Positions 11,720 to 57,563 are shown, counted from the first letter of the stretch. The stretch is DNA of 64,000 nt from Selaginella moellendorffii (GCF_000143415.4 NW_003314312.1:1319166-1383165); one strand, 5' to 3'. Program-made: numbers and translations. Notes: generated from the sequence alone by a model not told the origin.

Positions 11720-12000
11720 TGTTGTAAAAGACAGGTCCGATCCCCTGGAAGTGGTACAAGCCATAGTCTCCAAGGAGGATGTAGCAAATATTGCTCTTTG
11801 GCAAGAAGTGAGCTTGAGATGACAACCGCTGGCACAGTTCCCCGTTTCATGAAGAGGTTTGGTCCATACTGCTTGGACAGGGCATGCAATGAGAGGAAGG
11901 GAATTCCTGCGAGATGAAGGAGGGGCAATCCCCAGGGAGATGGAGGCAGCTTAAGGTGCAGCAAATATTTCCTTAAGGCAAGGAGAGTCCCCACAATCGT
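11720..12000 (-). pseudogene. cytochrome P450-B 5' fragment (paralog of 43147-44690)
   Basis: KYLLHLKLPPSPWGLPLL...SKQYGP...GDYGLYHFQGIGPV nearly identical to the 43147 gene; ATG lost, internal deletions, truncated. Confidence 0.9.
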
Positions 12001-12256
12001 GAATGTCAAATTTGTGAAGATTTGAGAAGCAACTAGCCCTTGGCATTTTATGCTTGCTTCTTTGAGACTTGCTTGAGAATTCTAGTCAACCACAACTTTG
12101 ACGAGCGCCACACTTGAATTGACTTGATCTTGATGCAACAATCTTTCAAGTCACTATAGATGGACTCATTGGCTCCCAACGAAAAACGTTGCTGGTTCTT
12201 GTTTCTGTTGTTTCAGTGAAAGACGGCCAAACTTGACAAGCAATATAAAAGTTTAA

Positions 12257-13793
12257 TTATATAGCTTTTGGGACTCTTGAAGAAACAACAACCTCAAGTG
12301 GTGTTTCCAACCAGAGAACAGTCCCACTTTGTTCCTTGAGCTCGTAACAATCCATGCCTTTGCCAGGAACAAAGCTCCAGTCGAAAGAGTGAATCAAGTT
12401 AAACAATAGCAATTGAGCAGTCTTCAATCCCAGTGACATCCCCGGACACATTCTTCGGCCCGCACCAAATGGAAGCAGCTCAAAGTCCTGGCCTTTTACG
12501 TCAATCGAGTTCCCAAGGAACCTTTCCGGCTTGAATTTCAATGCATCCTCCCATACTGCCGGATCTCTTCCAATTGCATAACCATTGACAAATGTGGAAG
12601 TTCCTTTGAGAATGTCATAGCCAGCAACCTTGCACGCTCATGTGAATCAGCAGCGGAGCTGGAGGATGAATGCGAAACGCTTCCTTGACGATTGCCTGAA
12701 GGTACTCCAGTTTGTCAAAGTCGCTCTCCGCAACAAGGCATTCCTTTCCAACAACGGTGTCAATCTCTTCCTGGGCCTTTTGAAGAATAAGTGGATTGTG
12801 CATGAGTTCCAACAGCGTCCATTCAATCAAACTAGCGCTGGTATCTCCTCCAGATAAAAGCTCCTGCATAATTCGAGATTAGCCAACATTTCTATAAGAT
12901 AAGCGTTGACTTTGTTACCGTGACAATAGCTTTGACCGATAACGTTGACTTTGTTCCTCTCCCCGGGCTCCTTCGCTTTTCAAGCTTTGCAGCATGGTAT
13001 CCATGAAATCTTTGGGCTGCGAGGTATTGGACTCGAGCCTAGCCTTGTGGGCATCTAAAATTCTCTGCAAGAACTTGTCTTGTCTCGCATGTATCCTCTT
13101 CATCTCTGGGATCTTCCAGTCAATCCGTCTCATGAACGCCGGTACGAACTCACTGATGTGGAATTGAAGCATCTGCTCGGTGATTTCAAACACAATGTGC
13201 TTGAAATCCTCGGCCTCACTGCTCATCTCAGCCTCATGCTCACCATACTCGAAGAAACGCTTGCTCATCAGGATCTGCATGACAACATTGAAGACATGTT
13301 GTCAGGAGGTGCTCATGTTGATTGGCTTCTGAAAGTCAGCCGCATTCACAAGCTCAGACAAGACGCCACGCATTTCTCTCGTTCGCACCCCTTGAAACGA
13401 TTCAATGCGCTTGACAGTAAAGAGCTCTGTAGCGCAAAGCTTCCTCATTCTTTTCCAGTAGTCGCCATACGGAACAAAACCAATGTCTCGGAAGTTGTAG
13501 AAGTTGTACTCCCCCATGATCAAGTATGGCCTCGAGGCAAAATTTGCATCCTGGATCTTTAGTACCTCTTTCACTAGCTCCGGACTGGAGATCACCACAG
13601 CTGGTACCATTCCCAGGCGTAAAAACACAATCGGTCCATACTTTGTGGAGAGTGCCTGGAATGAAAGGTGTAGCATTCTTCCCAAGAGATGCAAGTGACC
13701 GATAAGAGGTAGCCCCATGGAGATGGAGGCAAATTAAGCCGCCATGAAGAGAAGAGTGATCAACAAAACAACTGCGTATTGAGCAAACTCCAT
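12257..13793 (-). pseudogene. cytochrome P450-A (CYP71 clan), full length but frameshifted; intron 12864-12918
   Basis: MEFAQY start at 13793, PPSPW, ExxR (KEAFR), PERF and heme motif PFGAGRRMCPG are present; frameshifts or deletions near 13740, 13715, 13300 and 12640. Confidence 0.9.
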
Positions 13794-14409: not shown

Positions 14410-15230
14410 TCATATCAGGTTTAATAAATTTTGGATCTGGTTGAGTTTGTTTGAACTTGCCACCACATTGCAACTTTTCGGGTCCGACACGATGATGGTG
14501 CGCTTTGGATCCAGAATCCAAGTCCCACGAAACGTGCCTCCACTCAGTAGGTTATCCACGCCATGGTAGTGGCTGCTCGCATACACCAGATTCGCTGGGA
14601 TTGCGCAGGAGAGAACATCCAGGAACTTCAGGAAATCTTTCTTCCCATTCCGGGACGCATTCGCGGCAAGGATATCGCGGTAAAAGATGAATTCGTCTTC
14701 CTTGTCCTGGATCATCCTCCACGTAGTGTTCACGGCGTCCTGAAACGTCTGCACGCTCTGATCGGTGAGCAGCACCGCCGGAAGATTGTTAAACTTATTC
14801 TTGTAAAACTCCTTGAGAAACGAGAAGACGTCGTTCACCATCCACATATGATCGAGCATAGCGTTCTGAGCACTGATGTAATCCAGGGATTCAACATCCT
14901 CATCGTCAAATAAAGCACCCATTGAAGACGTTCTTCCTCCGGTCTAGAGCTTGTAGTCCTGCGTCAAGTCGTCACTCAAGATGCTTCTTGCCCAGCCCTG
15001 AACAGTGGAAACCGTGAGCTTGAACAGCTCCGGCTTCAACAGAGACCTCAAATCCTTCATCAGATCGTGGCACGCTCGATAGGCAAGAATATCCGGAACT
15101 TCCGCGAGCGATGCGGTTCCATAGCAGAGGCTATGAACAGTGTCGATATACGATGACGCGAGAGCTCCAGCAACCTCGTTGTCATCAAATGGATCGTCCA
15201 GGAAAGCAGTGAGCCAGGGAAACTTCGCCT
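14410..15230 (-). pseudogene. MTPSL: microbial terpene synthase-like (MTPSL) gene, 5'-truncated
   Basis: Intronless; DDxxD-type FLDDPFDD (~15181-15205) and NSE/DTE-type NDVFSFLKE; TAG and indels near 14945; RY dyad mutated to HY; no N-terminus. Confidence 0.85.
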
Positions 15231-15332: not shown

Positions 15333-16906
15333 ATGGAGTTTCTAGCGTGCGCGATTGCTCTTGTGTTCTTCATCTATGTTCTTGTATGGGGAATTCCAGG
15401 TGGAGGGCACCGCCGTCTCAACTTGCCAGTATCACCCAGTGGGTCTCTTCCATTGATCGGACACCTCCACCTCTTTGGGAGGAAACCCCATCTCTCTCTC
15501 CTTGCACTGTCCAACAAGTATGGACCGATCTTCTCTCTCCGGCTGGGAATGGTGCCATCCGTGGTGGTCGCGAGCGCCCATCTGGCCAAGGAGCTCTTCA
15601 AAACCCAGGACGTTACATTCTCTTCCAGGCCGTATTTCATGCCAGGGGAGTATAGCTTCTACAACTTCCTTGACATGGGATTTGCGCCTTACGGCGATTA
15701 CTGGAAGAACATGCGGAAGCTGTGTGCCACGGAGCTCTTCACAATCAGGCGCATCGATTCTTTCTTGTGGGTACGAACAGAGGAGCTCCGTGAGATGCTA
15801 TCCGCGCTCTTGGATTCTTCTCTGGATTGCAAGCCCGTCAACATGAGAGACATGGTCACGACATGCCTGTTCAATGTGGTCACCCGGATCTTGATGAGCA
15901 AGAGGTTCTACACGTTTGTGGGAGATGAGGCAACGATGGATGACGATGCCCGGGAGTTTAAGAGCCTCCTGCTGTCCATCACAGACCAGGCGCTCGATTT
16001 TCACATCAGCGAGTTTGTCCCGCCGTGGCTTAGAGGCATCGACTGGAAGATCCCGCGGCTCAAGAAGCTGCAGGCAAAGATTGATAGTTTCTTGCAGAAG
16101 ATAGTCGACGAGCACAAGCTTGGTGTCGATAGCGGCAAGGAGGACTTTATGCACATCATGCTCGAGTACCTCAAGGATGAACCATATTGCGAGGACAGTG
16201 TCAAGGCCAATAGCATGGTAAGTTCTTCCTCTCGTGATTTGATGTCTCTTAACTATATCCTCGAATGTGCCAGGAGCTTATATCTGGTGGAACAGACACA
16301 AGTGCCGCCGTGATCGAGTGGGCGATCCTGGAGCTTCTTCACCACCCGGAGATGCTACGAAAAGCTCAAGAGGAGATGGACGTGGTGGTGGGGAATTCTC
16401 GCCTGGTCGGAGAAGCCGACATTGCGCAGCTCCAGTATATGCAAGCAGTGATCAAGGAAACCTTCCGCCTCCATCCTCCAATTCCTCTTCTACCTCGCAT
16501 GGCATCTCACGACTGCAAGCTGGGAGGATTTGATGTTCCAAAGGGCGCAACCACGTTCTTGCACGTCTACGCCATTGGAAGGGATCCAGCCGTGTGGGAC
16601 GAACCATTGAAGTTCATGCCGGAGAGGTTCTTGGGGAATTCCTTGGATGTCAAGGGCCAGGACTATGAGCTGCTTCCATTTGGCTCTGGTCGCAGGGGTT
16701 GTCCGGGGATGATACTGGGATTACGAACGGTGCAGCTTCTGGTATCCAACTTGATTCACAGCTTCGATTGGAGCTTTGCGGGGGAGAGGGGAGGAGAAGC
16801 ATTTCCTCTGGAAGAACGAGATACTGCTGGGACTGTTATTTGGACCAAGACTCCGCTCCAAGTCGTGGCCACTCCAAGACTTAGGAAGGAGGTACTGCTA
16901 GGCTGA
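15333..16906 (+). CDS. cytochrome P450-C (CYP71 clan), intact, 505 aa; exons 15333-16217 and 16274-16906
   Basis: N-terminal TM anchor, LPLIGHLH, I-helix SGGTDT, KETFR, PERF, PFGSGRRGCPG; 56 bp phase-0 GT-AG intron at the conserved A-type position; no stops after splicing. Confidence 0.93.
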
Positions 16907-16989: not shown

Positions 16990-17311
16990 GTGCATGAAAC
17001 CAAAAGGTATAATAAGCATGCTGTACTGATGAGTGAGGCTGCAACAGAACTCCTCCCAATCGTCTCTACTGTCGTTGTGGTCACCCTGCTTCATTGCGAA
17101 GTAAACTGACCATTGAATGTACAAGGTAAGAGTGGGAAGTTTTTTTGTACAGCTTTTCTCTGAGAAAATGTTTCAAACTGAAAGAGCCAATGCAATGTCA
17201 AGTCAAAAAAAGTTTTAAATGAAAGGTCAAAAATAAACTTTGAAATTAAAAACAAATGTAACTCTAAAGGATCAGCTAAAATTCCACAGTTCTCAGCTAT
17301 GGCATGAGGGG
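16990..17311 (-). pseudogene. 3' remnant (last codons and 3' flank) of an SDR gene paralogous to 51001-52388
   Basis: caaaaggtataataagcatg...gatgagtgaggc...cgtctctac-gtcgttgt-gtcacc-tgcttcattgc and ...ggcatgagggg align to 50765-51080; cut by the LTR at 17313. Confidence 0.7.
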
Positions 17312-17312
17312 T

Positions 17313-17967
17313 TGTTAGGTGCCAGCTTTGACTCTGTCAACATGAGTCAAAAGGAAAGGTTAACCTACCCTAGGGCTCATAGTGGAGCAGTAGCACAGTG
17401 GGTCAAGGGTGGCTGAGTGGAAGGAATTTCAAAAGGAGGTGTAGCATAGTTTATAGTGTTGGAATTTAACATTTGTATTAGTTGTTGGTTGACTAAAATG
17501 AATATTAGAATTCTATTGTTGATGGTGGTGCTGATGATGCTGTCAATAAAACTATGAAAGTTTAGACCATTCAAGATATTGTTTATGAGATATGAACCTT
17601 TAATCAAATTTGGCAAGAGATGTAAGATGAAATGTATGGCATGATAGATACTATGTGTAAGTGTGTTAGGGCATTCGAGGCTAAATATGGTGGTCCTCCA
17701 ACTAAAACTTCTTTGGTGGACTTAAGATTCCAACTTTTTTTGGTGATGGTGATATGGATGAATGTCTGGCTTAGCTAACAAGTTCTTAGTTACCAAAGGA
17801 ACTTCAAATGCAGAGGCTTTAGTGGCTATTCTAATGGTTTTGCATGATATAGGTCTTTTATGGTGGAATTAGCTTATATTTTGAATAAAAAACCATTAAT
17901 GTCTACCATAAATGAGTTTAAAGCTGCTTTTTGTTTATGTTTTGCCCCTCACTATGATGTGGAGAAT
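17313..17967 (+). mobile_element. old gypsy family A element: degenerate 5' LTR (17313-17471) plus gag remnant, interrupted by a family B LTR
   Basis: tgttaggtgccagctttgact LTR start; gag text ...FKAAFCLCFAPHYDVEN matches 35774-36205. Confidence 0.75.
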
Positions 17968-18877
17968 TGTCGCGAATGTGACTTCGGGTATCAAAAGATA
18001 CTTGTCGACCGGTCCTTACAGACACTCTTTCCTTACTGCCATGATGGCAGGAGATCGGTATAGTTGGATCCCTTTAGTAGCCCCTCTTGTGCTAGTGGAG
18101 TTAACTGGGCATTTCGAGTGTACTTAAACCGGACGGAATTCCTACGTGCTATTAGTTAAGCATACTTAGCCTAGTAAGGAGTTCCCGTCTCGTTATGTCT
18201 TGCACTTGCTAGTGACAAGAACCCTCGCGTATTGAGATTAGTCCCTCAATATCACTAGATGATAGCTTACCATATCTGCCAAACACCCTTGCTATCATGC
18301 CCTTTGTGTTAGTCTCATTTCGGTCCCAAATGCTATTTATAGAAAGTGTCTAGATTCGCTCATTTAGCATGTATACGGAATGTAAAGGTCGGCCTGAACA
18401 CAATGGTGTTCGTCTCGTGTCCAAATTCGCAATCTAGTGCCATTCCATATTTAGTAAGTTTTGAGCTTGTCCCAAAGACTAACTCCTGGTACTAAGGGAA
18501 GCTTGGGGTGAAAGCCCAAAGTGTGTGTTCCTCAAGGGCGGGGGGGGCCTGTGGGGGGTTCCAAATGTATAGTAGGGATAGTGGTTGGAATGCATGTTCG
18601 ACCACCTGAGACATTAGTTTGGCTCCCGCTGGGATGTGTCGCTCCTTGTTCTGCGTCCGGCTTGGGTCTAAGCCCAAGCTCCATGCCGCTCTAGTTGGTG
18701 GAGTACCCTCCTCCTCGCGTTAGGCCATCGGTATGCCAAAATTGTGCCAGACTCCGTCTGACACCATTTTGCGTGCAAGTGCTGGATACGGGGAGCTAGT
18801 GCTCGTGGGATTGTACCGGACCCTCGTTTCGTAGCGCAACGGGCTTGGAGTTTGGCTCCTAATTCAGGTGTGCTACA
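17968..18877 (+). repeat. 5' LTR of gypsy family B (910 bp) followed by an initiator-Met PBS
   Basis: TGT...ACA termini; TGGTATCAGAG at 18880-18890. Confidence 0.85.
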
Positions 18878-19068
18878 TTTGGTATCAGAGGAATTGTCTC
18901 AGCGATTCCTATCTAACTTTTGTCGGATTTTCTGACTCAAGTTGCATACGCAGAAACTTTTCTAGTAAATCTGAAGCGACCTGTGTAGGATTAGTTGGAT
19001 TGCACCATTCGGTAAGAATGTTGTATGCATGTTCAGTTACTGATAGAGGCATGCATACAGCTAGCAGG

Positions 19069-20206
19069 ATGGTGAAGAGGAACCATGCTGATGACGCTGA
19101 AACCTCTAGACGGGCAAATCGAGAGGAGGAAACTCCTACTAGAGATGCTACGGAAGAGGTAGAGGCTGAGTCAGAAGAGGAAGAGCCAGATGCTGCGGCA
19201 CTACAGCGTACAGCTCAGGAAGTCGAGATTGAGAATTTGCGAAGGGAGATTCGCAAATTGAAGAAGGAGAACAACAAGAGGAAGAAAGAAGCTGAGGCAG
19301 CTAAACCAGTTAAGCCTAAGCAACCGGACTCCTCCTCAAGTTCCGAGGACGATGAAGTTCTGCAGCAGCCCCCAGTTGCACGAATTTCAAAGTTCAAGCC
19401 CCCGAAACCACCCAACTTCAGAGGCATGCGGGACTATCAGGTTTTGGAAGACTGGGTCTACGATATGGAAAATTATTTCATAGCAGCAAACGTAGATGAT
19501 CGTACAAAAGTTGTGTGTGCACAATCCTTTCTCACCGATCATGCCAAAACTTGGTGGCGCCAGGTGTGTGCTGAAAAAGGGCAGACTAGAAGTTGGGTCT
19601 CTATCCATAAGGAATACTTGCCGGATGATCTTGGTCTAAGACTTTGCGCGGAGCTGCAGCGGTTAAAGCAGCGAGGGGATCTCATGCATTACGTTAATGT
19701 GTTTGCTCAGAAGCGTATTATGATTGCAAATATGAGTGATGAAGGTGCTCGGAGTTATTTCCTGGAGGGTTTAAGTTCACTTTCTCGTAATGAGATTTTG
19801 AAGTTTAAGCCAAAGACGTATCTGGAGTGTAAGGAGGCAGCACAGCAAGTTGCCTTTAGTCACTCGCTCATGGAACAATATCAGCAATCGTATGCTGGTA
19901 ACTCGGATAAGAATAAGAATTCTAGGAATAAACAAGGTGATCGGAAACAGAGGGTGGAAGGCAGGTTCCGCTCTGGAGGCTCACAAGCAACGGTTAACAA
20001 AGGTGGTGGTGGTTGGAGACCACCAGCAGCTTCTTCTGGTCCTAGGCCCTCTGTTCCTCCTCCTGGTGGGTACAAGCCGTAGCAACCTGCAAAACCTGCT
20101 CTTAGTGAAATGGGTAGTGTGGGTCATTGCTTCCATTGTGGAGAGTCGGGATATAGATCCTCGGAATGTCCCAACAAGCATAAGACAAGGTCTCAAGTTA
20201 ATGTCA
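19069..20206 (+). mobile_element. gypsy family B gag (5' half of a chromovirus split by the inversion)
   Basis: Retrotransposon gag core (FLTDHAKTWW...LKQRG), knuckle CFHCGESGYRSSEC after one premature TAG at 20080-20082. Confidence 0.85.
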
Positions 20207-22862
20207 GCTTCACATTGCTGATCTATCGAAACCTTACGAGGTGACATGTGATGCGAGTGGTTATGCATTGGGAGGAGTTCTCATACAAGAGGGACAGCCT
20301 ATTGCATATGAGAGTTGAACTTTAAATTCCGTGGAGCAACACTATTCCACATATAAGCAAGAGTTACTCTCTATTGTTCATGCTTTGCGGACATGGCGGC
20401 ACTATCTTTATGGTACAGTGTTCGTGGTGTTGACAGATCACAAACCACTTGTGTATCTTTTCACACAGAAGGAGTTGAACACTCGGCAAGCTCGTCGAAT
20501 GGTCAAACTTATGGAGTTTGGGGAGTTTCCTATTGAGCATCGTCCAGGAAAATCCAATATGGTGGCAGATGCTTTATCTCGTGTTCGTCATGTGACAACG
20601 TTACAAACACGATTTTGTCATCATTTGAGTAAGGTGGTCAGCGAGTTTGGGCAGTTGGTTGAGCATGCTCAGGCTCAGGATGCTGAGGTGGCCTCTTTGC
20701 GAGCCCAGATGGAAGTCCCTTTTTCATTGGTGGATGGGATTCTCTACTACAATAGCCGTGTATATTTGCCACGGGTGGATGTGTTAATTACTCAAGTTTT
20801 ATTCCACTATCATGATCGTCCAGAGGCCGGTCATTTTGGGGGGAAGAAGACGTATAAGTTGATTAAGCCCAACTTTTATTGGAGGAATATGAAGGCTGAT
20901 ATCCTCAAGTATTGTAAATCATGCGAGCTTTGTCAGCGGGTTAAGGTGCCACGGGAGAAGCCAGGAGGACTTTTGCAACCTTTACCTATTCCTCAGAGCC
21001 ATTGGTGTAGTATCTCTATGGACTTCATCACTTATTTGCCACGAACACAGAGGCAAAAGGAGCAAGTATGGGTCGTAGTGGATCAGTTGACGAAATATGT
21101 GCGGTTGTTGGCTCTTCAAAAGAATGTCACTGCCTCAGACTTGGCTGCGGTTTACTTGGAGAAGGTTTTTCCTGATTTTGGTTTGCCGGAGGACATCATT
21201 AGTGACAGGTTTGCCGGAGGACATCATGTTTTGCGGACGTGGCAGCATTATCTTTATGGTGCAGTGTTCGTGGTGTTGACAGATTACAAACCACTTGTGT
21301 ATCTTTTCACACAAAAGGAGTTGAACACTCCGCAAGCTCATTGGATGGTCAAACTCATGGAGTTTGGGGAGTTTCCTATTGAGCATCGTCCGGGAAAATC
21401 CAATGTGGTGGCAGATGCTTTATCTCGTGTTCGTCATATGACGACGTTACAAACACGATTTTGTCATCATTTGAGTAAGGTGGTCAGCGAGTTTGGGCAG
21501 TTGGTTAAGCATGCTCAGGCTCAAGATGCTGAGGTGGCCTCTTTACGAGACCAGATGGAAGCTCTTTTCTCATTGGTGGATGGGATTCTCTACTACAATG
21601 GCCATGTATATTTGCCACGGGTGGATGCATTAATTACTCAAGTTTTATTCCACTATCATGATCGTCCAAAGGCCGGTCATTTTGGGGGGAAGAAGACGTA
21701 TGAGTTGATTAAGCGCAACTTTTATTGGAGGAATATGAAGGCTGATATCCTCAAGTATTGTAAATCATGCGAGCTTTGTCAGCGGGTTAAGGTGCCACGG
21801 GAGAAGCCAGGAGGACTTTTGCAACCTTTACCTATTCCTCAGAGCCATTGGTGTAGTATCTCTATGGACTTCATCACTTATTTGCCACGAACACAGAGGC
21901 AAAAGGAGCAAGTATGGGTCGTAGTGGATCAGTTGACGAAATATGTGCGGTTGTTGGCTCTTCAAAAGAATGTCACTGCCTCAGACTTGGCTGCGGTTTA
22001 CTTGGAGAAGGTTTTTCCTGATTTTGGTTTGCCGGAGGACATCATTAGTGATCGAGATTCAAAGTTCACCAGTGGATTTTGGAAAAGCTTTGCAAAGGCT
22101 ATGCAAGTGACTTTGAAACTCTCGAGTGGAGATCATCCTCAGACGGATGGGCAAACCGAGCATGTGAATCAGGTGGTGGAAGATATGCTACGTTGTAGCA
22201 TTGGTCAAAGGCAAGGACAGTGGGATTTATATCTTCCGTTGGTGCAATTTGCTTACAACAATAGCCAACACAATGGAACCAAACTAAGTCCTTACTTTGC
22301 CATGTTTGGAAGGCATCCTCGAATAGCAGTGGAGTTGGGATTGCATTAGAGTAAGGATGTTCAAGATAAGCTTGATTCCGAGGCAACTGATCTGACCACA
22401 CAACTTGATGAGATTTTGGTGGTGTGCGAATGAAATTTGCAAGCAGCTCAGGATAGAGTGGAGAAGTTTGCCAATGAGCATCGCCAATTCCGGGAATATA
22501 AGGTGGGTGATCTCGTCTTTGTGCGCGTGATCTTTCCGTCAAGTGAGCGGCAGAACACATTGGTGCCTTTACGGATACGGAAGAGTGATAAACTTTCCTA
22601 TTGATATGCTGGTCCATATGAAGTTCTGGAATGCATTGGTAAAGCGGCTTATAGGGTGCGGCAGCCAGCTGGGGTGAAAATTCATCCGGTATTTTATGTC
22701 AGCCAATTGAAAGGTGTACTATCTCGGAGTGACGGGCCCAATGCCTCCTTGATGTATACGGCTATGGACAATAGACTAGGAGCTTGAGCAAGGTTTCCCC
22801 AGAAAGGGTGATCACCGGTACAACTCGTCCTTGGGACAAGGACTTTGTTGGGGGGGAAGAAT
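20207..22862 (+). mobile_element. gypsy family A pol 3' half (RNase H, integrase) containing an 846 bp tandem duplication; PPT at 22850-22862
   Basis: CDASGYA, TDHKPL, ADALSR, HHCC zinc finger, SMDFI, SDRD, HPQTDGQTE, GPY/F; gggggggaagaat precedes the LTR. Confidence 0.9.
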
Positions 22863-23096
22863 TGTTAGGCACCAGCTTTGACTACGTGGTCAATGTCGGT
22901 CAAAGGGAGGCTCAAGGGTATATTAAGGCTAGTTAGGGTAAGGGACTTAACCTACCCTAGGGGCTCACAGTGGAGTGGCGGCGCAATGGAGCTTTTGAGG
23001 TAGCTAGGGGGTGATTGGGTGGTGAGGAACCTCAAGAGGTGGTGTAGTATAGTCTAGGGCGACTAGATCTCTATCTTTTTGCGCCGGATCATAACA
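22863..23096 (+). repeat. 3' LTR of gypsy family A (234 bp), followed by TSD ATGAT
   Basis: TGTTAGG...CATAACA; matches 36323-36556, 56869-57080 and 62090-62322. Confidence 0.9.
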
Positions 23097-24632: not shown

Positions 24633-24639
24633 AGCCCGG

Positions 24640-39935: not shown

Positions 39936-40235
39936 GAAGACGAATTCATCTATTACTGTGATATCCTTCCTGCAAATGCTTCCCAGAATAGGAAGAAAGA
40001 TTTCCTGAAGTTCCTGGATGTTCTCTCCTGCGCAATCCCAGTGAATCTAGTGTTCCACTATGCGAGCAGCCGCTACCATGGCATGGATAACCCCCTACTG
40101 GGTGGAGGCACATTTCGTGGGACTTGGATTCTGGATCCAAAGTGCACCATGATCATGTCAAACCCGAAAAGGTGCAAAGCAGTTGCAAGTTCAAACAAAC
40201 TCAACCAGATCCAAAATTTATCAAACCTGATCTGA
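39936..40235 (+). pseudogene. MTPSL: MTPSL C-terminal fragment (second copy)
   Basis: EDEFIYYCDIL...FLKFLDVLSCAIPVNLVFHYASSRYHG...NLSNLI* is collinear with 14410-14700 and retains the RY dyad. Confidence 0.85.
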
Positions 40236-45472: not shown

Positions 45473-45769
45473 GTTGTATTCCAGCCAGAAAATGCAAAGG
45501 CAGAAAAGTCTAGGATTCAACAACAAGGAAGCAATATGAAAGTAATACTCCTGGGGTTGGATCTGAGCTCTCTCATGTTGGGAAGGGCTTTAAACCTTAC
45601 CCTAAAGAAGAAAAAAGAAAGAATAGAGCTGGATCTCAAGGTATATGCATCTAACATGATTAGAGCAACAGATCTATAATACTATAGCTACTAGAGGTAT
45701 TGCATGAGCTAATGAGGAGTGAGCATTGAAGCTAACTGGAGTTAATTGGAGGTGGTGGATTCCATTGTG

Positions 45770-47899: not shown

Positions 47900-50500
47900 C
47901 ATATACACCTCCTCCTCAAGATCACCCACCATTGAGGAATGCTGTGTGCACATCAAGTTGATAGAGCTCAAGATCAAGCTCAGCTGCTAAAACTAGAAGC
48001 AAGCAAATGGTGGTTAACTTAACTACCCGACTGTGATCTGAATTTGCGAGAAGCCACAAATGACAAATCTGGCTTTGAATTGCTCCACACTCCCATCTGC
48101 CTTTGTACTTCTTTTTAAAGAGCCACTTGGAGCTCATGACTTTCCTTCCTGGTGGCAATGGCATGAGAGTCCAAGTGTCATTTTTAAGCAAAGAAGAATA
48201 CTCATCTTGTATCACTTCTTGCCACTTTTGAGCGTCAGGACTAGCAAGAGCCTCCATATATCCTTGAGGCTCAGGAAGGCTTTGCATTGCCCAGTAGAAT
48301 CATTTCTGTCGTGGTTCCTGGGCAATGGCCTCAAGCACTTTGACTGAAAGCTTGGTTACACGTTCAGAGCGTCGTGGACCAAAGACCTGTGGAGGTGGAG
48401 GAGTCATCACTGGGTCAACTGAAATATTTCATCGCCTAAAATGTCGTCGACGATGGCAACAAGCGAGGGCTCAGCTGAAGAAGTGGGACTGCTGGTGGAA
48501 GCAGTAGAAGGTGCAAGAAGTGGCGTGTGAGGAGGAGATCTATCACCTCCAGCCACCAAGGGCACTGCTCGGCCAGGATCTTGTGGGCCTTGGTTGTTAG
48601 CTCCTCCTGGAGGAAGTACCTTTGAGGTCTCGATACAGCTCTTGCTCGTTGAAAATCACATCGCGGCTCACTACAAGCTTCTTTTGGAAGAGATTATAGA
48701 GCCGGTAGGCCTTGGCCCCCGAAGATGGTCTTCGTGCTGCGTGGATCGAGCTTGCGCCTGTTCGGATCAGGGATGCGGGCGTACGCACTGCACCCAAAGA
48801 TCCGGATGTGCCCTCAATTTGGACGTTTCCCAGTCCAAACGTGATGCGGGATCAAGCCTGTGCTCCGGGTGGGCAAACGGTTACGCAAGTACACCGTCGT
48901 GTTCACTGCTTCTCCTCAGAAGCTGTGTGGCAGTCCGGAATGTAGAAGAAGGCAACGCACCATATCCAAGAGCGTCCGGTGCCACTGGTGTATAAGCAGC
49001 CGTGTACTGGTGAGAAATTCCTACCTCAGCTAGGAATTGGAGAAATCCTTGTGCAATGTATTCTCCTCCGCCATCTGTGCGTAGCACACTGATTTTTCTT
49101 CCTGTAAAATTTTCTGCCCAGCTTTTGAAAATTTTAAAGTTTTCAAAAACTTCGGATTTGTTTCGTACCAAACACACCACTGTGTATCGTGAGTGATCAT
49201 CTATGAATGAAACAAAATACCTCTTCCCACTTAGGGAATTTACAGGAAGATAGCAACCTTCGCTGTGAATAAGATCAAGCACTGCTGTGGCCTGGTTTTC
49301 CAAAGGTCGGGGAGGAAAAGGATAGCATGCATGTTTGCCAAGTTGGCAAGTCCCAGATGTCCAGATGGAAATGCGATGCCATCCTTCTCATTTACATGCC
49401 CGAGACGAGCATGCCAAAGATGAATTGTCTCTTGGCCTTGAAGCGCTAGCATGTATGTCCCTGGATAAACAAGCTCTGCGTTGAGGCGATAGAGTGTATC
49501 GTACCTCACTGCCATCTGCTCCAAAAATAGTACATCCTTCTGCAAAGAATGTGAGCGAGAACCCTTGATCGGAGGCAACGCCAACCGAAAGGACAGTCTG
49601 GCCTGCACCGGGCACATAGTGCATGTTATGGATTTCCTTGAGAGATCCATTGGGCAACTTGACTTACACCATGCCACGGCCTTCAACGTCGAGAGGTCGC
49701 TTGTCTCCAACAAAGACTTGTTTTGGGGAAAGCAATTCGTGGAAAGTGTGGAATGCTGTACGAAGAGGAGTCATGTGGTAAGAAGCACCACTGTCCAACC
49801 AGAGGATGTCTAAACCAGATCTCGCTCTATGTGCCCCATCTTCCCGCAGTAGGTACACGGCCCCTTCTTTTTCTTGTTTCCGAAGCCAGGTGTTGGTGTC
49901 GCAGGAGCACTGGCAAGTCCGCGAGAATTCCCATGCTTCTTGGCATTTCCATTTCCTGACTTCTTGCCGATGAACAAAGCCTGATCACGAGCAGAATCTG
50001 AGGAGGTCGTGCTTGCTTTTCGCTCCAGAAGCTTGCGCTCTTCTTCCAAGAGATTGGAATAAAGCTCGTCTAGGGTCTTTCCTGGAACGAAGGAGAACAT
50101 GGAGGAAGACGGTTGGAGTTCAGAAGAAACCGAATAGAGAAGGAAAGCTTTGGCATAATCGTCCGAGACAGGCGCGCCAGCCTCCTTAAGCTCTTGCATC
50201 TGCCAATGTACGATGCCATCGTGTCTGTTGGCTGCATCCGGAGAGAAAGGAACTTCTGGGTTAAGGACGATCTTGGCATTTGCTGCTTTCACAGCAACCT
50301 GCACCAAGGACTCCCAATTCTCGTGAGCGGTCTTCGAGAGATCCAGCAGATGGATGAACTCGTCGCCGAGTCCTAAGCCAATGACAGAGAGGGCTTGGCT
50401 TTCCACGCTGGCTGGAGAGCTGGTTCAGCTTCGGTGCCGTCCACGATTGTCCAGCAATCGTTTGCCATCAAGATGACCTTTGTTCTCTAGGTAAGTTTTC
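47900..50500 (-). mobile_element. Ty1/copia retrotransposon, internally deleted (gag, protease, integrase, RT start)
   Basis: CTYCGKMGHIERD, WLDSGASYHMT, LWHARLGH, FIDDHSR, LRTDGGGEY, EPQGYMEAL...KW, QLDVHTAFLNG in copia order. Confidence 0.9.
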
Positions 50501-51000: not shown

Positions 51001-52388
51001 TCAAGGATGAGACTTGATAAACTCCTCACTAAAAGTCCGCAGCTCTGCAGCCAACTTCATGTCCTTGGCATGAGGGGTGCAATCCGCTTCGTTGCAATCC
51101 AAGTAGTACTTTCCACTCACGCCCTCCATGCAAGGATGGACCGCAAGAAGCATGGTTGTAGCAGCGCCCTGAAAGAAATCACAGCTTTAATCCAGAAACG
51201 TAGGCTATGATATGTTTGTACCTGCGGGATGGATTTGCAAAGTGGGCTCGCAAGGAAGAGAAGCAGCTCTGCACAGCAGCACAAGTCGATCAATCTCAAT
51301 TCTTTTCAGATACTAACTTACTAGCTGAAGTCTGGTTGAAATCTCTTCCAAGGTTCGTCTTGATAGTTCCAGGATGAAGTGAATTTACAGTCACGTTGGC
51401 ACCCTTCTCCTGAAATGGAAGATCATCAAAATTATGTCTGGGAAAACTCGAGCACAAAAACTTTGAATCTATGGGCACCTTCAAGCGGCTTGCTAACTCC
51501 CTGGTATGCAGTATGTTGGCCAGTTTTGATCTTCCGTAGCTAGTAATCCATTGGAAGCTGCACGACGAGAGTTAAAGAAAATTCATTGGAAGATTGCAAG
51601 GAAAACCCAAATGCTTCCTCCTAATTATCAATTAAAAAACTAACCTGTTCTTATCATTCAGCTTGTCAAACTCAATCCCGCCTTTTGGAACATATCTGTG
51701 TCCTTCAGACGCCACCATGACAATCCGACCTTGCACTCCAGTTTGAGATGCAGTCTGGATCATCTTGTCCAACAGCAGCTCAGTGAGCAAAAACGGACCT
51801 GGATCATCATCCAAAGAGTGAAGGTTTTTCTAACAGACAAAACTTGAACACCATACCCATATGGTTTGTCGCGAAATCGAGCTCCAAGCCATCCGGTGAG
51901 AGCTGGAAGTTATTGGCCGTCATCCCAGCATTGTTTCTGCATTGATCCATGCATTTTGATCAGAAACACTAACAGGAGTGACTCACATGAGGATGTGGAG
52001 CGGGAGATTTAGAGCGTTGAAGTCGTCGACAAATTTCCTGACCGACTTGAGAGAGCTCAGATCCAACTCAAGAACAGTGACCCTTGCATTAGGGAATTCG
52101 CGTTGGATCTTGGACTTGGCTGCTTCAGCGTTCTGTAGCTTCCTGGCTGGGATAACAACGTGTGCACCGTGCTTGGCGAGAACTCTGGCAGTCTCAAACC
52201 CAATTCCGGAGGTAGCCCCTGTAGCTTGATAATGAGAAATCGAAGCAAACTACCGATGGAATCGGCATACCTGTGACGATTACCACTTTGGATTCCAGAG
52301 AAATCCCCTTTGCAACTTTCTCGGCTGTAGCTCCCGATCCAAAGCCTGTAGCGCCGCGGTATCCTGTGAAGTAGCTTATCACGCCCAT
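51001..52388 (-). CDS. short-chain dehydrogenase/reductase, TIC32/retinol-dehydrogenase-like, intact, 321 aa, 8 exons (52388-52271, 52218-51987, 51936-51857, 51798-51645, 51557-51479, 51409-51322, 51268-51222, 51168-51001)
   Basis: [24 protein letters not shown] (YxxxK), LHPG; all introns GT-AG (50-87 bp); exon sum 966 nt in frame. Confidence 0.9.
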
Positions 52389-52868: not shown

Positions 52869-55800
52869 ATGATAGCGATACTATCGATATTCTTGGTCGT
52901 TCTATTTGCTCCCGGCCATGTCCACCCCAAGTGTATAGCGGGCGAGCTGTGCTGGCCAGACGCACAGACCTGGGCATCCTTCAATCGCTCCGTGGGAGGA
53001 AGAATGATCAGCGTGGCCCCTCCAGCATCGCCATGCCATGATCCAAACTACGATGAGCGAGCCTGCAATGCTGTGAGGAGCGGCTGGAACAGTCCGTTCT
53101 GGAGGACCGATCAACCGGGTGCGCTGCAACGGACGAGCTGGGAATTGTTTGGGGAGCAGCGCTGCCTGATCTCCTCCAACAGGACCGCCGCTTACTTCCA
53201 GGGTGCGGTCCCGGTCTACGCGATCAACGTTACTCGGGCGGCCCACGTCCAAGAGGCCGTCAAGTTTGCGTCCCGGCACGACTTGTGCATCGTGATAAAA
53301 AACATGGGGCATGACTTCCTCGGGTGGAGCACGGCGGTGGGAGCTCTCAGCATTTGGGTGCACCACCTCCAGAAGATCCAGTTCCACAAGAGCTTCAAAT
53401 GCGGCCGTGGTAGTGACCGTGGCTACTCAGCAGTGACGGTGGGAGCTGGAATTCAGTGGGAGGAGCTCTATTGGCAAGCGTATCAATGAAAGATGATCCT
53501 GGCTGGCGGGGGATGTTCCTCGGCTGGAGCAGCTGGCAGATACCCTCAAGGTGGCGGCCAAAGTTTCCTTTCCCCGCTAATCGGCTTGAGCGCTAGTACG
53601 AGGTGGTAACTGCGGATGGTAGGCTTGTCAAAGCAAATGCGTGCCAAAACACGGACTTGTTCTGGGCTCTCCGGGGTGGCGGCGGAGGAACATTCGGAGT
53701 TGTGCTCTCAGCAACGCACAGGACTTTTCCAGCTCTTGACAGCCTTGTCTTCGCTCCTCACAACTTCAGTGCCCCTGATACCACCACCTTTCAGGGGCTC
53801 ACTCTGTTTACGAGGTTGAATCCCTCTCTCTTCGATGCCGGCTGGTCCGGTTACAAAGAGTTTGTTATGCTCTCTGCTACATCTTTGAAGCAGGCTTGTT
53901 GTAATGGACAAGCCTGCTTCAAAGATGTTGCAGAGAGCCAAACTCTTTGTAAGCTGAGAATGACGCAAAGTGTTGCCGCATGCTCTCACTATGTAAGCCA
54001 TCAATGAAGTAGGACTTGTTCTGATCTAGATCTTTCGTTGGAACATGACTAATCAAGCAAGTAAGCTTCTCAATATAGTCCCCAAGTATCATTTTCCCTT
54101 GTTGGAAATGTCGAAGTTTTGTACGAGCATTCTCCATGTCATAATGAGGGGCAAAATGTAAACGGAAAGTAGCCTCAAACTCATCCATGGTAGACACTGG
54201 TGGTTTTTTATCCGCAATACGAGACTCCTCAAGCCAATTCCATCATCAAAGACCCACATCATGCAAAACCATTGGAATAGCCACTAAAGCCCCTGCATTT
54301 GGAGTTTCCCTAGCAGCCAAGAACTTCTTCACATTGGCTAGCCAAGCAAGACACTTGTCCACACCACCATCACTGAAAAAAGTTGAAATCTTGAGTCAAT
54401 CTACCAAAGAAGGCTTACTTGGAGTACTACCTCATCTAGCCTCGAGTGCCTCAACACGCCCACGCATGGTACCCATCATGCCATGCATCTCGTCTTGCAT
54501 CTCTTGCTGATTTCGATTAAAGGCTCGCAACTCGTGAAACTCATCCAAATCTCCACAGCTTCATCGGCACCATCGCTGGCACCACCATCGACAATAGGAT
54601 TCCAGCGTTCAGCTTGGTCGGCCATCGCAATCAACTCCTTTGATACCAATGTTATTGGAGCCAAGGACACAGCCAATTTACTGGCGTCTATTTTGGTTAA
54701 ATTATGCGGAGGAGCAAGAAGTTCAATGACAAGTCAAGGAATTACTTGAGTTTGGATTTATTCAGCCAAATAAATCCCTGTTTGGTGCTCCGGTCTTGCT
54801 TGTGAAAAAGGAGGACAGTTCAATGCGGATGTGTATTGACTACTGCCCCTTGAACAAGAAGACAGTGAAGGATAAGATGCCGATGCCACATGTGGATGAT
54901 ATTCTGGACAAGCTTGGTGAAGCAAGAGTGTTTACCAAGATTGATTTGAGGAGTGGATATCATCAGATTGCAATGGATGATGCATTTATCTCCAAGACGG
55001 CATTCGTTGTTACGAAAGAATGTGCCATTCAAGTGAAAGCAGCCACAAGAGGAGAGTTTTGTGGTGCTGAAATGATTGTTGAGCGAGACTCCAGTGCTTT
55101 GCATTGTTGATCCATTAAAACCTTACGAGGTGACATGCGATGCGAGTGGTTATGCATTAGGAGGAGTTCTCATGCAAGAGTTGCATATGAGAGTTAAACT
55201 TTGAATTCTGCGGAGCAACACTATTCCATATATAAGCAAGAGTTATTCTCTATTGTTCATGCTTTGCAGACATGGCGGCACTATCTTTATGGTGCAGTGA
55301 TGGTGGTGTTGACAAATCACAAACCACTTGTGTATCTTTTCACACAGAAGGAGTTGAACACTAGGCAAGCTCGTTGGATGGTTAAACTCATGGAGTTTGG
55401 GGAGTTTTCTATTGAGCATCGTCCAGGAAAATCAAATGTGGTGGCAAATGCTTTATCTTGTGTTTGTCATGTGATGATGTTACAAACAGGATTTTGTCAT
55501 CATTTGAGTAAGGTGGTCAGCAAGTTTAGGCAGTTGATTGAGCATGCTCAGGCTCAGGATGCTGAGGTGGCCTCTTTACGAGAAGAGATGGAAGCCCCTT
55601 TCTCGTTGGTGGATGGGATTCTCTACTACAATGGCCGTATATATTTGCCACGGGTGGATGCATTAATTACTTAAGTTTTATTCCACTATTATGATCGTCC
55701 AGAGGCCGGTCATTTTGGGGGGAAGAAGACGTATGAGCGCAACTTTTATTGGAGGAATAGGAAGGCTGATATCCTCAAGTATTGTAAATCATGCGAGCTT

Positions 55801-57563
55801 TGTCAGTGGGTTAAGGTGCCACGGGAGAAGCTGGGGGGACTTTTGCAACCTTTACCTATTTTTCAGAGTCATTGGTGTAGTATCTCTATGGATTTCATCA
55901 CTTATTTGCCATGAACATAAAGGCAAAAGAAGCAAGTATGGGTTATAATGGATCGGTTGATGAAGTATGTGCGGTTGTTGGCTCTTCGGAATACTGACAC
56001 TTCCTCAGACTTGGCTACAGTTTACTTGGAGAAGGTTTTTCCTGATTTTGGTTTGCCAGAGGACATCATTAGTGATCGAAATTCAAAGTTCACCAGTGGA
56101 TTTTGGAAAAGCTTTGCATAGGCTATGCAACTGACTTTGAAACTCTCGAGTGGAGATCATCCTCAGACGGATGGGCAAACTGAGCATGTGAATCAGGTGG
56201 TGGAGGATATGCTACGTTGTAGCATTGGTCAAAGGCAAGGACAACAGGATTTATATCTTCCGTTGGTGCAATTTGCTTACAACAATAGCCAACACAGTGG
56301 AACCAAACTAAGTCCTTACTTTGCCATGTTTGGAAGGCATCCTCGAACAGTAGTGGAGTTGGGATTGCATTTGAGTAAGGATGTTCAAGATAAGCTTGAT
56401 TCCTAGGCAACTGATCTAGCCACAAAACTTGATGAGATTCTAGTGGTGTGCAAACAAAATTTACAAGTAGCTCAGGATAGAGTGGAGAAGTTTGCCAATG
56501 AGCATCGCCAATTCCGGGAATATAAGGTAGGTGATTTCGTCTTTGTGCGAGTGATCTTTCCATCAAGTGAGCAGCAGAACACCTTGGTGCCTTTATGGAC
56601 AGGGAAGAGTGATAAACTTTCCTATCGATATGCTGGTCCATATGAAAAGCGGCTTATCAGGTGTGGCTGCCAGCTGGGGTGAAAATTCATCCGATATTTT
56701 ATATCAGCCAGTGTAAATGTGTACTATCTCAGAGTGACGGGCCCAATGCCTCCTTGATGTATATGGCTGTGGAAGATAGACTAAGAGCTTGAGTAGAGTT
56801 CCCTCAAAAGGGTGATCACCAATAAAATTTGTCCTTGGGACAAGGACTTTGTTGGGGGGGGGGAGAATTGTTAGGCGCCAACTTTGACCACATGGTTAAT
56901 GTCAGTCAAAGAGAGGCTCAAGGATATATTAAGGGTGAGGGACTTAACCTACCCTAGGGCTCACAAGGGAGCGGCGGTGCAACGGAGCTTTTGAGGTAGC
57001 TTCAAGTGAGGAACCTCAAGAGGTGGCGTAGCATAGTCTAGGGCAACTAAATCTTTGTCTTTTTGAGCTGGATCATAACATGCTTGGGCCTCAACAACTT
57101 GGGAGTCTTGGATGTCTTCGCAACGAGGCTGATCCCGAGATCACTCTTCAACCACGAACAAGACCTCCTCCCAAAGGCCATGATGCGTGTCATGACCGAG
57201 CTGCAAGTTCTAGCTACATATGCAATCCTAGGGAGCGGAAAAGTGCGAGAACCCCAAGACAGCACTGTGAATCCAGCATATCGCGACGGACTGTGGCTGC
57301 TCGTATTGCCCCTGACTTGGTGGGACAATGCGACAGTGGCGGAGATGAGGGCTGCTGCGAATCTAGTGTTGCAGGCGAACAAGCTCTTCATCAATCTCAC
57401 GCCAGGCTCCGGGACTTACGTGAACGAGGCCGATTACAACGAGCCCAATTGGCAGCAATCCTTCTTTGGGAAGAACTATCCTCGCCTGTACCACATCAAG
57501 AGCATGGTCGATCCTACCAATCTCTTTACGTGCCATCACTGTGTGGGTAGCGAATTCAACTGA
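52869..57563 (+). pseudogene. secreted FAD-linked oxidoreductase (BBE/VAO family, fungal-type), split by a retrotransposon: 5' part 52869-53853, 3' part 57081-57563
   Basis: Signal peptide, C...CWP...W..FN.SV.GR, GHDFLG(W)[19 protein letters not shown]-terminal YVNEAD...FFGKNYPRL..IK..VDP.NLF; TGA at 53487, small deletions, no introns. Confidence 0.88.
53854..57080 (+). mobile_element. rearranged gypsy family A element inside the FAD oxidase: inverted gag/PBS piece (~53940-54655), deleted pol, PPT and 3' LTR (56869-57080)
   Basis: Sequence identity to 33784-36322 and 20207-23096. Confidence 0.88.

What the first reader, a model, noticed from the sequence alone, without database searches (positions are those of the whole stretch)
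11720..57563. Candidate terpenoid biosynthetic gene cluster built around a microbial-type terpene synthase
Seen: every recognisable non-transposon gene in this 46 kb is an enzyme of one theme, namely MTPSL (2 copies), CYP71-clan P450s of three types (6 copies or remnants), SDR (3) and a FAD-linked oxidase, packed with 100-600 bp spacers. Established: a scaffold-forming terpene synthase plus P450, SDR and oxidase tailoring enzymes is the typical layout of angiosperm and fungal terpenoid clusters, and MTPSLs are characteristic of non-seed plants. Inference: the ancestral unit was P450-B<-P450-A<-MTPSL // P450-C-><-SDR // FAD oxidase, making an oxidised mono- or sesquiterpenoid. I know of no characterised MTPSL-centred plant cluster with this composition, but cannot verify novelty. 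In this window the synthase is dead, so the working version would be elsewhere or in another haplotype.
Basis: partly seen in the sequence, partly recalled or inferred. Interest (0 to 1): 0.92.

Follow-up and report, generated by a model that had tools for sequence, protein, structure and literature searches.

The report
Decayed spikemoss terpene-synthase/P450 gene block
In the spikemoss Selaginella moellendorffii this stretch carries a transposon-riddled, mostly dead copy of a repeatedly duplicated block of enzyme genes (microbial-type terpene synthase, three kinds of P450, a reductase and a fungal-type flavin oxidase), so it is a relic of a possible terpenoid pathway cluster and cannot work as one by itself.

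Summary
The window is Selaginella moellendorffii scaffold GL377616.1, about 1,319,166-1,383,165.

**Dead**
- Both microbial-type terpene synthase (MTPSL) copies. One lacks residues 1-89 and has a stop, a deletion and an RY-to-HY change. The other is a 99-residue tail.
- Both P450-B copies.

**Intact**
- P450-A (spliced transcript in four RNA contig sets), P450-C and one SDR.
- I count five P450 loci, not six. I count one SDR plus one fragment, not three SDRs.

**The block elsewhere**
- It recurs at least three more times (L002, L003, L007), so the linkage is real but comes from segmental duplication.
- The 5' truncation of the synthase is shared with the neighbouring copy, so it predates that duplication.
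- An intact 372-aa MTPSL of this lineage lies on GL377664.1 beside dead P450-A and P450-B copies.
- The nearest other intact MTPSL, and a more distant FAD oxidase paralogue, have unrelated neighbours.
- The FAD oxidase is fungal-type (MtVAO615-like).

**Verdict:** this is a decaying relic of a candidate cluster, and no shared pathway has been shown. The scan had already found the same block on adjacent DNA (s1-334485) and on another scaffold (s1-420466).

The parts
11721..11976 (-). P450-C' fragment (about residues 17-115 of P450-C only)
   Evidence: tblastn of P0004: 89-90% identity over residues 17-81 and 95-115. This is the inverted nucleotide duplicate of 43191-43389.
12260..13793 (-). P450-B pseudogene
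   Evidence: PF00067 matches in three ORF pieces. Against the intact paralogue P0002 it has a stop and a 6-residue gap in the membrane anchor, a stop at 13302-13304, and a frameshift with a stop near 12640. No RNA contigs apart from scraps.
14413..15228 (-). MTPSL pseudogene 1, 5'-truncated
   Evidence: PF19086 match. It aligns only to residues 90-372 of the intact ORF L007:7476-8594, at 84% identity. It has TAG at 14944-14946, a 6-residue deletion, and SSRYHG changed to SSHYHG. The DDPFD and NDVFSFLKE motifs are still readable. No RNA contigs at 98% or more.
15333..16906 (+). P450-A, intact and transcribed (SELMODRAFT_421431)
   Evidence: 100% match to P0001 in two exons, 15333-16217 and 16274-16903. 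Spliced contigs with the 56-nt GT..AG intron removed and at most one mismatch are present in four runs from four studies.
16992..17097 (.). Copy of the SDR 3' flank only; the SDR that once followed P450-A is gone
   Evidence: 83% nucleotide match to 50765-50857. No SDR coding pieces by tblastn. Retrotransposon sequence starts at about 17500.
17500..24633 (+). Ty3/gypsy retrotransposon material (gag, RNase H, integrase), with an internal duplication
   Evidence: Pfam Retrotrans_gag, RT_RNaseH, Integrase_H2C2 and rve. Repeats are shared with 55-57 kb and 62-64 kb.
29500..36560 (-). Ty3/gypsy retrotransposon material (gag, protease, RT, integrase)
   Evidence: Pfam RVP_2, RVT_1, rve, SH3_Tf2-1 and Retrotrans_gag.
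39936..40232 (+). MTPSL pseudogene 2, C-terminal 99 residues only
   Evidence: 89% identity to residues 274-372 of the intact L007 ORF. It is part of the inverted duplicate of 14302-14700.
41436..42844 (+). P450-B' pseudogene
   Evidence: tblastn of P0002 gives five or more HSPs in different frames, with stops. 89.5% nucleotide inverted duplicate of 12479-13942.
43147..44690 (+). P450-C, intact (SELMODRAFT_115322)
   Evidence: 100% match to P0004 in two exons, 43147-44016 and 44076-44687. Its 31-mers are held at 0.5-0.84 in the same contig sets that carry spliced P450-A.
45395..45604 (+). Degenerate SDR exon-2 fragment
   Evidence: 44% identity to SDR exon 2. No other SDR exons nearby.
47925..50424 (-). 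Ty1/copia retrotransposon remnant
   Evidence: Pfam RVT_2, rve, Retrotran_gag_2 and zf-CCHC.
51001..52388 (-). SDR, intact, 8 exons, 317 aa
   Evidence: adh_short match. The motifs [12 protein letters not shown] and YGRSK are present. Canonical GT-AG splicing gives an open 317-aa frame, as in the annotated copy in L002 (321 aa). Against that copy dN is 0.0055 and dS is 0.032.
52869..53854 (+). FAD oxidase pseudogene, 5' part (residues 1-334)
   Evidence: 93% identity to the intronless P0122 (558 aa). It has a stop at 53487-53489 and a frameshift plus stop near 53580-53600. PF01565 match.
53855..57077 (.). Retrotransposon sequence replacing residues 335-397 of the FAD oxidase
   Evidence: Nucleotide repeats shared with 20.2-23.1 kb, 34.3-36.3 kb and 62-64 kb. 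The gap in the P0122 alignment falls here.
57078..57563 (+). FAD oxidase pseudogene, 3' part (residues 398-558, BBE domain)
   Evidence: 93% identity to P0122. PF08031 match.

Best explanation
The region is one decaying paralogous copy of a multi-gene block, internally re-duplicated in inverted orientation and broken up by LTR retrotransposons. The block has been segmentally duplicated several times near the end of S. moellendorffii scaffold GL377616.1 and onto GL377664.1.

The inferred ancestral unit is P450-A head-to-head with an MTPSL, followed by P450-B and P450-C, with a head-to-head SDR/FAD-oxidase pair next to it.

In this window the scaffold-forming enzyme was already dead before the latest duplication. 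It had lost its first 89 codons together with part of the shared intergenic region. P450-B and the FAD oxidase died later. Only P450-A (transcribed), P450-C and the SDR remain intact.

The window therefore cannot make a terpenoid on its own. Whether the ancestral block was a true co-functional terpenoid cluster is inferred from composition only. I put that at about one in three.
For: - **Identity and position:** P450-A is SELMODRAFT_421431 at GL377616.1:1334498.
- **Inverted internal duplication:** 11794-14700 matches 43389-39936 at 86-90% nucleotide identity.
- **Lesions:** MTPSL; P450-B and B'; FAD oxidase.
- **Intact genes:** P450-A and P450-C match their annotated proteins at 100%. The SDR splices to an open 317-aa frame.
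- **Transcription:** spliced P450-A contigs appear in four studies. None covers the MTPSL or P450-B remnants.
- **Other copies of the block:**
  - L002 has SDR head-to-head with an intact FAD oxidase, a P450 pseudogene, and P450-A' head-to-head with a truncated MTPSL, then intact P450-B and a P450-C fragment.
  - L003 has a FAD oxidase, P450 fragments and a full-length but frameshifted MTPSL.
  - L007 has a dead P450-A head-to-head with an intact 372-aa MTPSL, then a broken MTPSL and a dead P450-B.
- **Shared truncation:** the same residue-90 truncation occurs in the window and in L002. Their P450-A and SDR copies are 98-99% identical.
- **Transposon content:**
Against: - RNA evidence comes from assembled contigs only, which cannot prove that the MTPSL remnant is silent.
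- I could not examine the allelic haplotype of this exact stretch, so an intact allele is not excluded.
- The order of decay events is inferred from shared lesions and identities, not from a rooted tree.
- The recurrence of MTPSL/P450 head-to-head pairs elsewhere in this genome (first-stage notes s1-431113, s1-431118, s1-398802, unchecked) could mean the pairing is functionally favoured.
Confidence: 0.7

Rival explanations
1. A working pathway exists but is dispersed. The intact members scattered over the paralogous copies act together in trans to make an oxidised sesquiterpenoid. These are the MTPSL on GL377664.1, P450-A, P450-C and the SDR here, and P450-B and the FAD oxidase in the adjacent copy. 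This window would then be a live part of that pathway.
For: - Every enzyme class has at least one intact copy: L007 7476-8594, P0001 and P0004, P0002 and P0122, and the SDR.
- P450-A is transcribed, and P450-C k-mers are present in the same RNA contig sets.
- SDR dN/dS is about 0.17.
- The FAD oxidase's nearest characterised relatives oxidise bulky secondary alcohols (PMC6017366). That chemistry would suit a terpene alcohol.
Against: - There is no co-expression or activity data.
- Intact members are never together in one fetched copy, and decay is reciprocal. That argues against selection for the set.
- Expression of the intact MTPSL is untested.
- The dN/dS value rests on 11 substitutions.
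Confidence: 0.2
2. The block was never a pathway. Unrelated specialised-metabolism genes from large, fast-evolving families happened to lie together in a transposon-rich, duplication-prone scaffold end. They were then amplified as passengers of segmental duplication.
For: - All observed linkage traces back to one ancestral juxtaposition.
- The closest intact MTPSL (P0277) has unrelated neighbours, and so does a FAD oxidase paralogue (P0129).
- The region is more than half retrotransposon sequence.
- S. moellendorffii has 48 MTPSLs (PMC6779861) and, to my knowledge, some two hundred P450s, so some MTPSL-P450 adjacency is expected by chance.
Against: - Four enzyme classes within about 15 kb, including a rare FAD oxidase family, are unlikely to meet by chance.
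- Two head-to-head pairs with spacers of 100-480 bp (P450-A with the MTPSL, SDR with the FAD oxidase) suggest shared regulation.
- Other MTPSL/P450 head-to-head modules are noted elsewhere in the genome, though those notes are unchecked.
Confidence: 0.25

Closest known systems
Angiosperm terpene synthase/P450 biosynthetic gene clusters (for example the rice momilactone and phytocassane clusters and Arabidopsis triterpene clusters)
   Same: A scaffold-forming class I terpene synthase lies next to CYP71-clan P450s and a short-chain dehydrogenase within a few kilobases. The block grew by local duplication and is embedded in transposon-rich DNA.
   Different: - The synthase is a single-domain microbial-type enzyme (PF19086), not a classical plant TPS.
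- The block also carries a fungal-type VAO/BBE oxidase.
- The host is a lycophyte.
- In this window the synthase, one P450 type and the oxidase are pseudogenes.
- No product or co-expression is known.
SmMTPSL family of Selaginella moellendorffii (Li et al. 2012, as summarised in PMC6779861; eight members characterised in PMC7826640)
   Same: The remnants belong to this family. They match PF19086, carry the DDxxD and NSE/DTE motifs, and are 72-84% identical to full-length S. moellendorffii MTPSLs of 367-372 aa.
   Different: Characterised SmMTPSLs are full-length mono- or sesquiterpene synthases. The window copies lack residues 1-89 or residues 1-273 and carry a stop. In the papers I could search, no linkage of MTPSLs to P450, SDR or FAD oxidase genes is described.
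Fungal clade-II VAO-type flavoprotein oxidases MtVAO615 and MtVAO713 (PDB 6f72, 6f74; PMC6017366)
   Same: The intact paralogue P0122 aligns end to end with MtVAO615 (E 2e-90). It keeps the His and Cys positions that tether FAD bicovalently (sequence read). Its nearest relatives outside Selaginella are fungi.
   Different: - It is encoded in a plant genome, in a lycophyte-plus-fern group nested among fungal sequences.
- The substrate is unknown, and so is that of MtVAO615.
- The window copy is broken.

Membership tests
Microbial terpene synthase-like (MTPSL) class I terpene synthases | Single alpha-domain fold matching microbial-type TPS profiles and not plant TPS profiles | tested here: met
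   PF19086 is the only Pfam match. The closest solved chains are microbial-type terpene synthases. The closest proteins are S. moellendorffii MTPSLs.
Microbial terpene synthase-like (MTPSL) class I terpene synthases | Complete catalytic apparatus: full-length helices, DDxxD, NSE/DTE and the RY pair | tested here: not met
   In the window copy, DDPFD and NDVFSFLKE are present, but residues 1-89 are missing, there is a TAG at 14944-14946 and a 6-residue deletion, and RY has become HY. The second copy holds residues 274-372 only. All features are met by the paralogue L007:7476-8594.
Plant biosynthetic gene cluster (operational definition: at least three different enzyme classes of one pathway, co-located and co-regulated) | Physical co-location of a scaffold enzyme with two or more tailoring enzyme classes | tested here: met
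   MTPSL, P450, SDR and FAD oxidase lie within 46 kb here, and within about 12 kb in L002.
Plant biosynthetic gene cluster (operational definition: at least three different enzyme classes of one pathway, co-located and co-regulated) | All members functional in one locus | tested here: not met
   In the window the MTPSL (two copies), P450-B (two copies) and the FAD oxidase are pseudogenes. None of the four other fetched block-related stretches (L002, L003, L004, L007) has a complete intact set.
Plant biosynthetic gene cluster (operational definition: at least three different enzyme classes of one pathway, co-located and co-regulated) | Co-expression of members | tested here: inconclusive
   P450-A is spliced and present in four RNA contig sets, and the MTPSL remnant is absent from them. 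P450-C k-mers are present. Contigs give no expression levels, and the SDR and FAD oxidase were not examined.
Plant biosynthetic gene cluster (operational definition: at least three different enzyme classes of one pathway, co-located and co-regulated) | Members act on one another's products | not testable with these tools
   This needs heterologous expression and metabolite analysis.
CYP71-clan (A-type) plant P450s | P450 fold with a heme-binding FxxGxRxCxG motif, and nearest named relatives in CYP71-clan families | tested here: met
   PF00067 match. PFGSGRRGCPG and PFGSGRRACAG are present. Outside Selaginella the best hits are named CYP81, CYP71, CYP75-like or CYP750. No family number was assigned.
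Classical short-chain dehydrogenase/reductase | TGxxxGxG cofactor motif, NNAG, and a catalytic Ser...YxxxK | tested here: met
   [20 protein letters not shown] and YGRSK lie in an open spliced 317-aa frame. adh_short match. Its resemblance to TIC32/WWOX-like SDRs is recalled from memory and was not tested.
VAO/BBE-type bicovalent flavoprotein oxidase, fungal clade II (MtVAO615-like) | FAD_binding_4 plus a BBE domain, the His and Cys FAD-tethering residues, and end-to-end similarity to the fungal clade and not to plant BBE-likes | tested here: met
   For the family: PF01565 and PF08031. MtVAO615 scores E 2e-90 over the full length, whereas plant BBE-likes score about 1e-21 over the FAD domain only. 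The top 120 relatives are fungi, rotifers and a fern, with no seed plants. The window copy itself is a pseudogene.

The most novel reading that the evidence does not exclude
Lycophytes may have assembled a terpenoid pathway block around two enzymes of microbial or fungal ancestry, plus plant CYP71-clan P450s and an SDR. The two are an MTPSL and a clade-II VAO/BBE-type flavin oxidase, both with a lycophyte-plus-fern distribution. On this reading the pathway still runs in S. moellendorffii from intact members spread over the paralogous copies. It would be the first MTPSL-centred plant biosynthetic cluster, and an example of horizontally acquired enzymes being wired into a plant cluster.
Probability: 0.18. 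Interest if true: 0.75.

Novelty: new variant of a known kind. Interest (0 to 1): 0.4.

Why it matters
Plant terpene synthase/P450 clusters are well known in seed plants. In the papers I could search, none is described that is built on a microbial-type synthase, and none pairs it with a fungal-type flavin oxidase.

If the block is or was a real pathway, clustering of specialised metabolism would reach back to lycophytes. It would also show that horizontally acquired enzymes can be recruited into plant clusters.

This particular window adds a decay series. It shows which members are lost first, and that the synthase died before the block's latest duplication. That is useful for asking whether linkage is under selection. 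On its own, the window is a relic.

Tried and rejected
- **Third SDR.** tblastn with all eight SDR exon peptides found only the intact gene and one exon-2 fragment. The stretch after P450-A holds only a copy of the SDR 3' flank.
- **TPS first exon elsewhere.** I asked whether the MTPSL is intact with an upstream exon. It is not. Its intact relatives are intronless (L006, L007). Only 105 bp separate the truncated end from the P450-A start codon, and the same break occurs in L002.
- **Transposon in an intron.** I asked whether the retrotransposon in the FAD oxidase sits harmlessly in an intron. It does not. The intact paralogue is intronless, 63 residues are missing, and there is a separate stop and a frameshift.
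- **Apparently full-length database models.** The 388-aa called gene in L003 and the corresponding 382-aa RefSeq protein (P0243) look like a full-length MTPSL. P0243 is a chimera of a frameshifted MTPSL with P450-B fragments. P0242 is also a chimera, of P450-A-derived pieces and a broken MTPSL.
- **Co-transfer of MTPSL and FAD oxidase as one fungal cluster.** This was not testable, because no fungal loci could be fetched. It is disfavoured because an intact MTPSL (P0277) and a FAD oxidase paralogue (P0129) are unlinked to the other gene classes.
- **Failed look-ups.** Exact look-ups for P0002, P0004, P0124, P0164 and P0241 found no record.
- **Literature.**
  - Li et al. 2012 is not held.
  - A search for the SELMODRAFT locus tags gave nothing.
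  - Searches for an MTPSL cluster, and for horizontal transfer of the oxidase, gave nothing relevant.
- **Unidentified ORFs.** Several ORFs in the spacers have no Pfam match. They include the 260-aa ORF at 26471-27250.


Full report
**Where the window is**

The first exon of P450-A matches SELMODRAFT_421431 of Selaginella moellendorffii at 100%. That gene lies at GL377616.1:1334498-1336071 of assembly GCA_000143415.2. The window therefore covers about 1,319,166-1,383,165 of a 1.44-Mb scaffold, close to its end.

**What is in 11.7-57.6 kb**

Pfam scans, self-comparisons and tblastn with annotated paralogues give the map below.

| Position | Strand | Feature | State |
|---|---|---|---|
| 11721-11976 | - | P450-C' | fragment |
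| 12260-13793 | - | P450-B | pseudogene |
| 14413-15228 | - | MTPSL | pseudogene |
| 15333-16906 | + | P450-A | intact |
| 16992-17097 | . | SDR 3' flank | flank copy only |
| 17.5-24.6 kb, 29.5-36.6 kb | | Ty3/gypsy | transposon sequence |
| 39936-40232 | + | MTPSL tail | 99 residues only |
| 41436-42844 | + | P450-B' | pseudogene |
| 43147-44690 | + | P450-C | intact |
| 45395-45604 | + | SDR exon 2 | degenerate fragment |
| 47.9-50.4 kb | - | Ty1/copia | transposon remnant |
| 51001-52388 | - | SDR | intact |
| 52869-53854 and 57078-57563 | + | FAD/BBE oxidase | pseudogene, halves separated by 3.2 kb of retrotransposon |

- The stretch 11794-14700 is an inverted duplicate of 43389-39936 at 86-90% nucleotide identity.
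The exceptions are five P450 loci and not six, and one SDR plus a fragment and not three SDRs.

**State of each gene**

- **P450-A and P450-C.** Both match their annotated 505-aa and 494-aa proteins at 100%, each in two exons.
- **SDR.** It splices through seven canonical GT-AG introns of 46-105 nt into an open 317-aa frame with [12 protein letters not shown] and YGRSK. The annotated copy in L002 has the same structure. Between the two copies dN is 0.0055 and dS is 0.032.
- **P450-B.** Compared with the intact paralogue P0002, it has a stop and a gap in the membrane anchor, a stop at 13302-13304, and a frameshift with a stop near 12640. P450-B' is shattered across frames.
- **MTPSL remnant.** It aligns only to residues 90-372 of an intact relative. 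It has TAG at 14944-14946, a 6-residue deletion, and the RY pair changed to HY. Only 105 bp separate its truncated end from the P450-A start codon. The second remnant holds residues 274-372 only.
- **FAD oxidase.** Compared with the intronless 558-aa P0122, it has a stop at 53487-53489 and a frameshift with a stop near 53590. Residues 335-397 are replaced by transposon sequence.

**Transcription**

- I laid four contig sets from four studies on 11600-17400 at 98% identity or more.
- All four carry P450-A with its 56-nt intron precisely removed and at most one mismatch, so these runs are RNA.
- None covers the MTPSL or P450-B remnants beyond scraps of under 140 nt.
- P450-C k-mers are held at 0.5-0.84 in the same runs.
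- Contigs cannot prove silence.

**The block elsewhere**

- **L002 (GL377616.1:1385294-1406970).** This is the adjacent copy.
  - It has the SDR head-to-head with an intact FAD oxidase (P0122), then a P450 pseudogene.
  - P450-A' sits head-to-head with an MTPSL truncated at the same residue 90.
  - Intact P450-B (P0002) and a P450-C fragment follow.
- **L003 (1411393-1433309).** It has a FAD oxidase, P450 fragments and a full-length but frameshifted MTPSL. The RefSeq model there (P0243) is an MTPSL/P450 chimera.
- **L004 (1274845-1296876).** It has a FAD oxidase copy with a P450-C fragment and an SDR fragment.
- **L007 (GL377664.1:152470-173905).** It has a dead P450-A copy head-to-head with an uninterrupted 372-aa MTPSL ORF carrying DDPFD, NDVFSFPKE and SSRYHG. 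PF19086 covers that ORF from profile position 1 to 198. A second, broken MTPSL and a dead P450-B follow.

Two genes outside the block have only unrelated housekeeping neighbours. One is the nearest other intact MTPSL, P0277 (SELMODRAFT_422096, GL377620.1). The other is a more distant FAD oxidase paralogue, P0129 (GL377639.1).

**Reading**

- The linkage is real and multi-gene, but it is one ancestral juxtaposition copied by segmental duplication.
- The residue-90 truncation is shared by the window and L002, whose P450-A and SDR copies are 98-99% identical. The synthase was therefore already dead when that duplication happened. P450-B and the oxidase decayed here afterwards.
- Decay is reciprocal between copies. 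The intact MTPSL sits beside dead P450-A and P450-B copies, and the intact P450-A sits beside a dead MTPSL. This argues against strong selection for linkage in cis.
- A pathway working in trans from the surviving members is still possible.

**The oxidase**

- Its closest relatives outside Selaginella are fungi: Calcarisporiella, Rhizoctonia and Ceratobasidium, chytrids, and Mortierella.
- Bdelloid rotifers and the fern Ceratopteris also appear. There are no seed plants among the top 120 hits.
- P0122 matches MtVAO615 over its full length at E 2e-90. Plant BBE-likes match only the FAD domain, at about 1e-21.
- A quick tree puts the Selaginella and Ceratopteris sequences together (SH-aLRT 85) among fungal and rotifer lineages. 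The tree is midpoint-rooted and has no plant BBE outgroup.
- MtVAO615 has no known substrate. Relatives of MtVAO713 oxidise bulky secondary alcohols (PMC6017366).
- The lycophyte-plus-fern distribution with microbial affinity parallels what is reported for MTPSLs (PMC7826640, PMC6779861).

**Novelty**

- In the searchable literature I found no description of an MTPSL linked to P450, SDR or FAD oxidase genes. Li et al. 2012 could not be read.
- The scan itself had already reported this block on the adjacent DNA (s1-334485) and on another scaffold (s1-420466), with the same conclusion of decaying duplicates. I reached that conclusion independently from the fetched loci.
- I added three things:
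  - the intact 372-aa MTPSL ORF on GL377664.1;
  - the shared truncation, which dates the synthase's death;
  - the pseudogene status of the oxidase in this window.

**Verdict**

- The interpretation as a candidate cluster is partly supported as a relic.
- This window cannot make a terpenoid by itself.

Noticed in passing
L007:7476-8594 (GL377664.1, about 163,3xx-164,4xx, reversed): An uninterrupted 372-aa MTPSL ORF with DDPFD, NDVFSFPKE and SSRYHG. It is 84% identical to the window's dead copy. The called gene model there (443 aa, 7476-10267) runs on past it. It is the best candidate for the working synthase of this lineage.
   Followed up: partly
L003:13185-15241 and L007:10001-11436: Database gene models are chimeras. 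XP_024542662.1 (P0243) joins a frameshifted MTPSL to P450-B fragments. SELMODRAFT_428158 (P0242) joins P450-A-derived pieces to a broken MTPSL. The tail of SELMODRAFT_421442 (P0223) matches a P450-C piece.
   Followed up: partly
window 52869-57563 and proteins P0122-P0240: The FAD oxidase family is fungal-type, with relatives in the fern Ceratopteris and in bdelloid rotifers but no seed plants among the top 120 hits. This is a possible ancient horizontal acquisition, parallel to the MTPSLs.
   Followed up: partly
window 20378-22051: The gypsy pol ORF (20331-22349) contains an internal tandem duplication of its RNase H/integrase-zinc-finger segment. 20378-21205 matches 21224-22051 at 96%.
   Followed up: no
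window 24957-26675: A repeat shared at about 87% with L007:4-1702 and L003:3495-5177, which lies beside other copies of the block. It overlaps the 260-aa ORF at 26471-27250(-), which has no Pfam match. It may be an unclassified transposon or a further member of the block.
   Followed up: no
window 57676-58267: The sequence just downstream of the FAD oxidase is conserved in the L003 and L004 copies and is incorporated into the tails of their gene models (P0223 residues 354-486, P0209 residues 357-481). ORF 57913-58233 in this stretch was scanned against Pfam and had no match.
   Followed up: no
window 2031-2367: An assembly gap of 337 N lies inside an ORF whose readable part looks like a SWIM/MULE-type transposase zinc finger.
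   Followed up: no
window 10246-11388 and 61638-62089: Direct repeats at about 83% identity flank the whole studied region on both sides, next to gypsy sequence at 62-64 kb.
   Followed up: no
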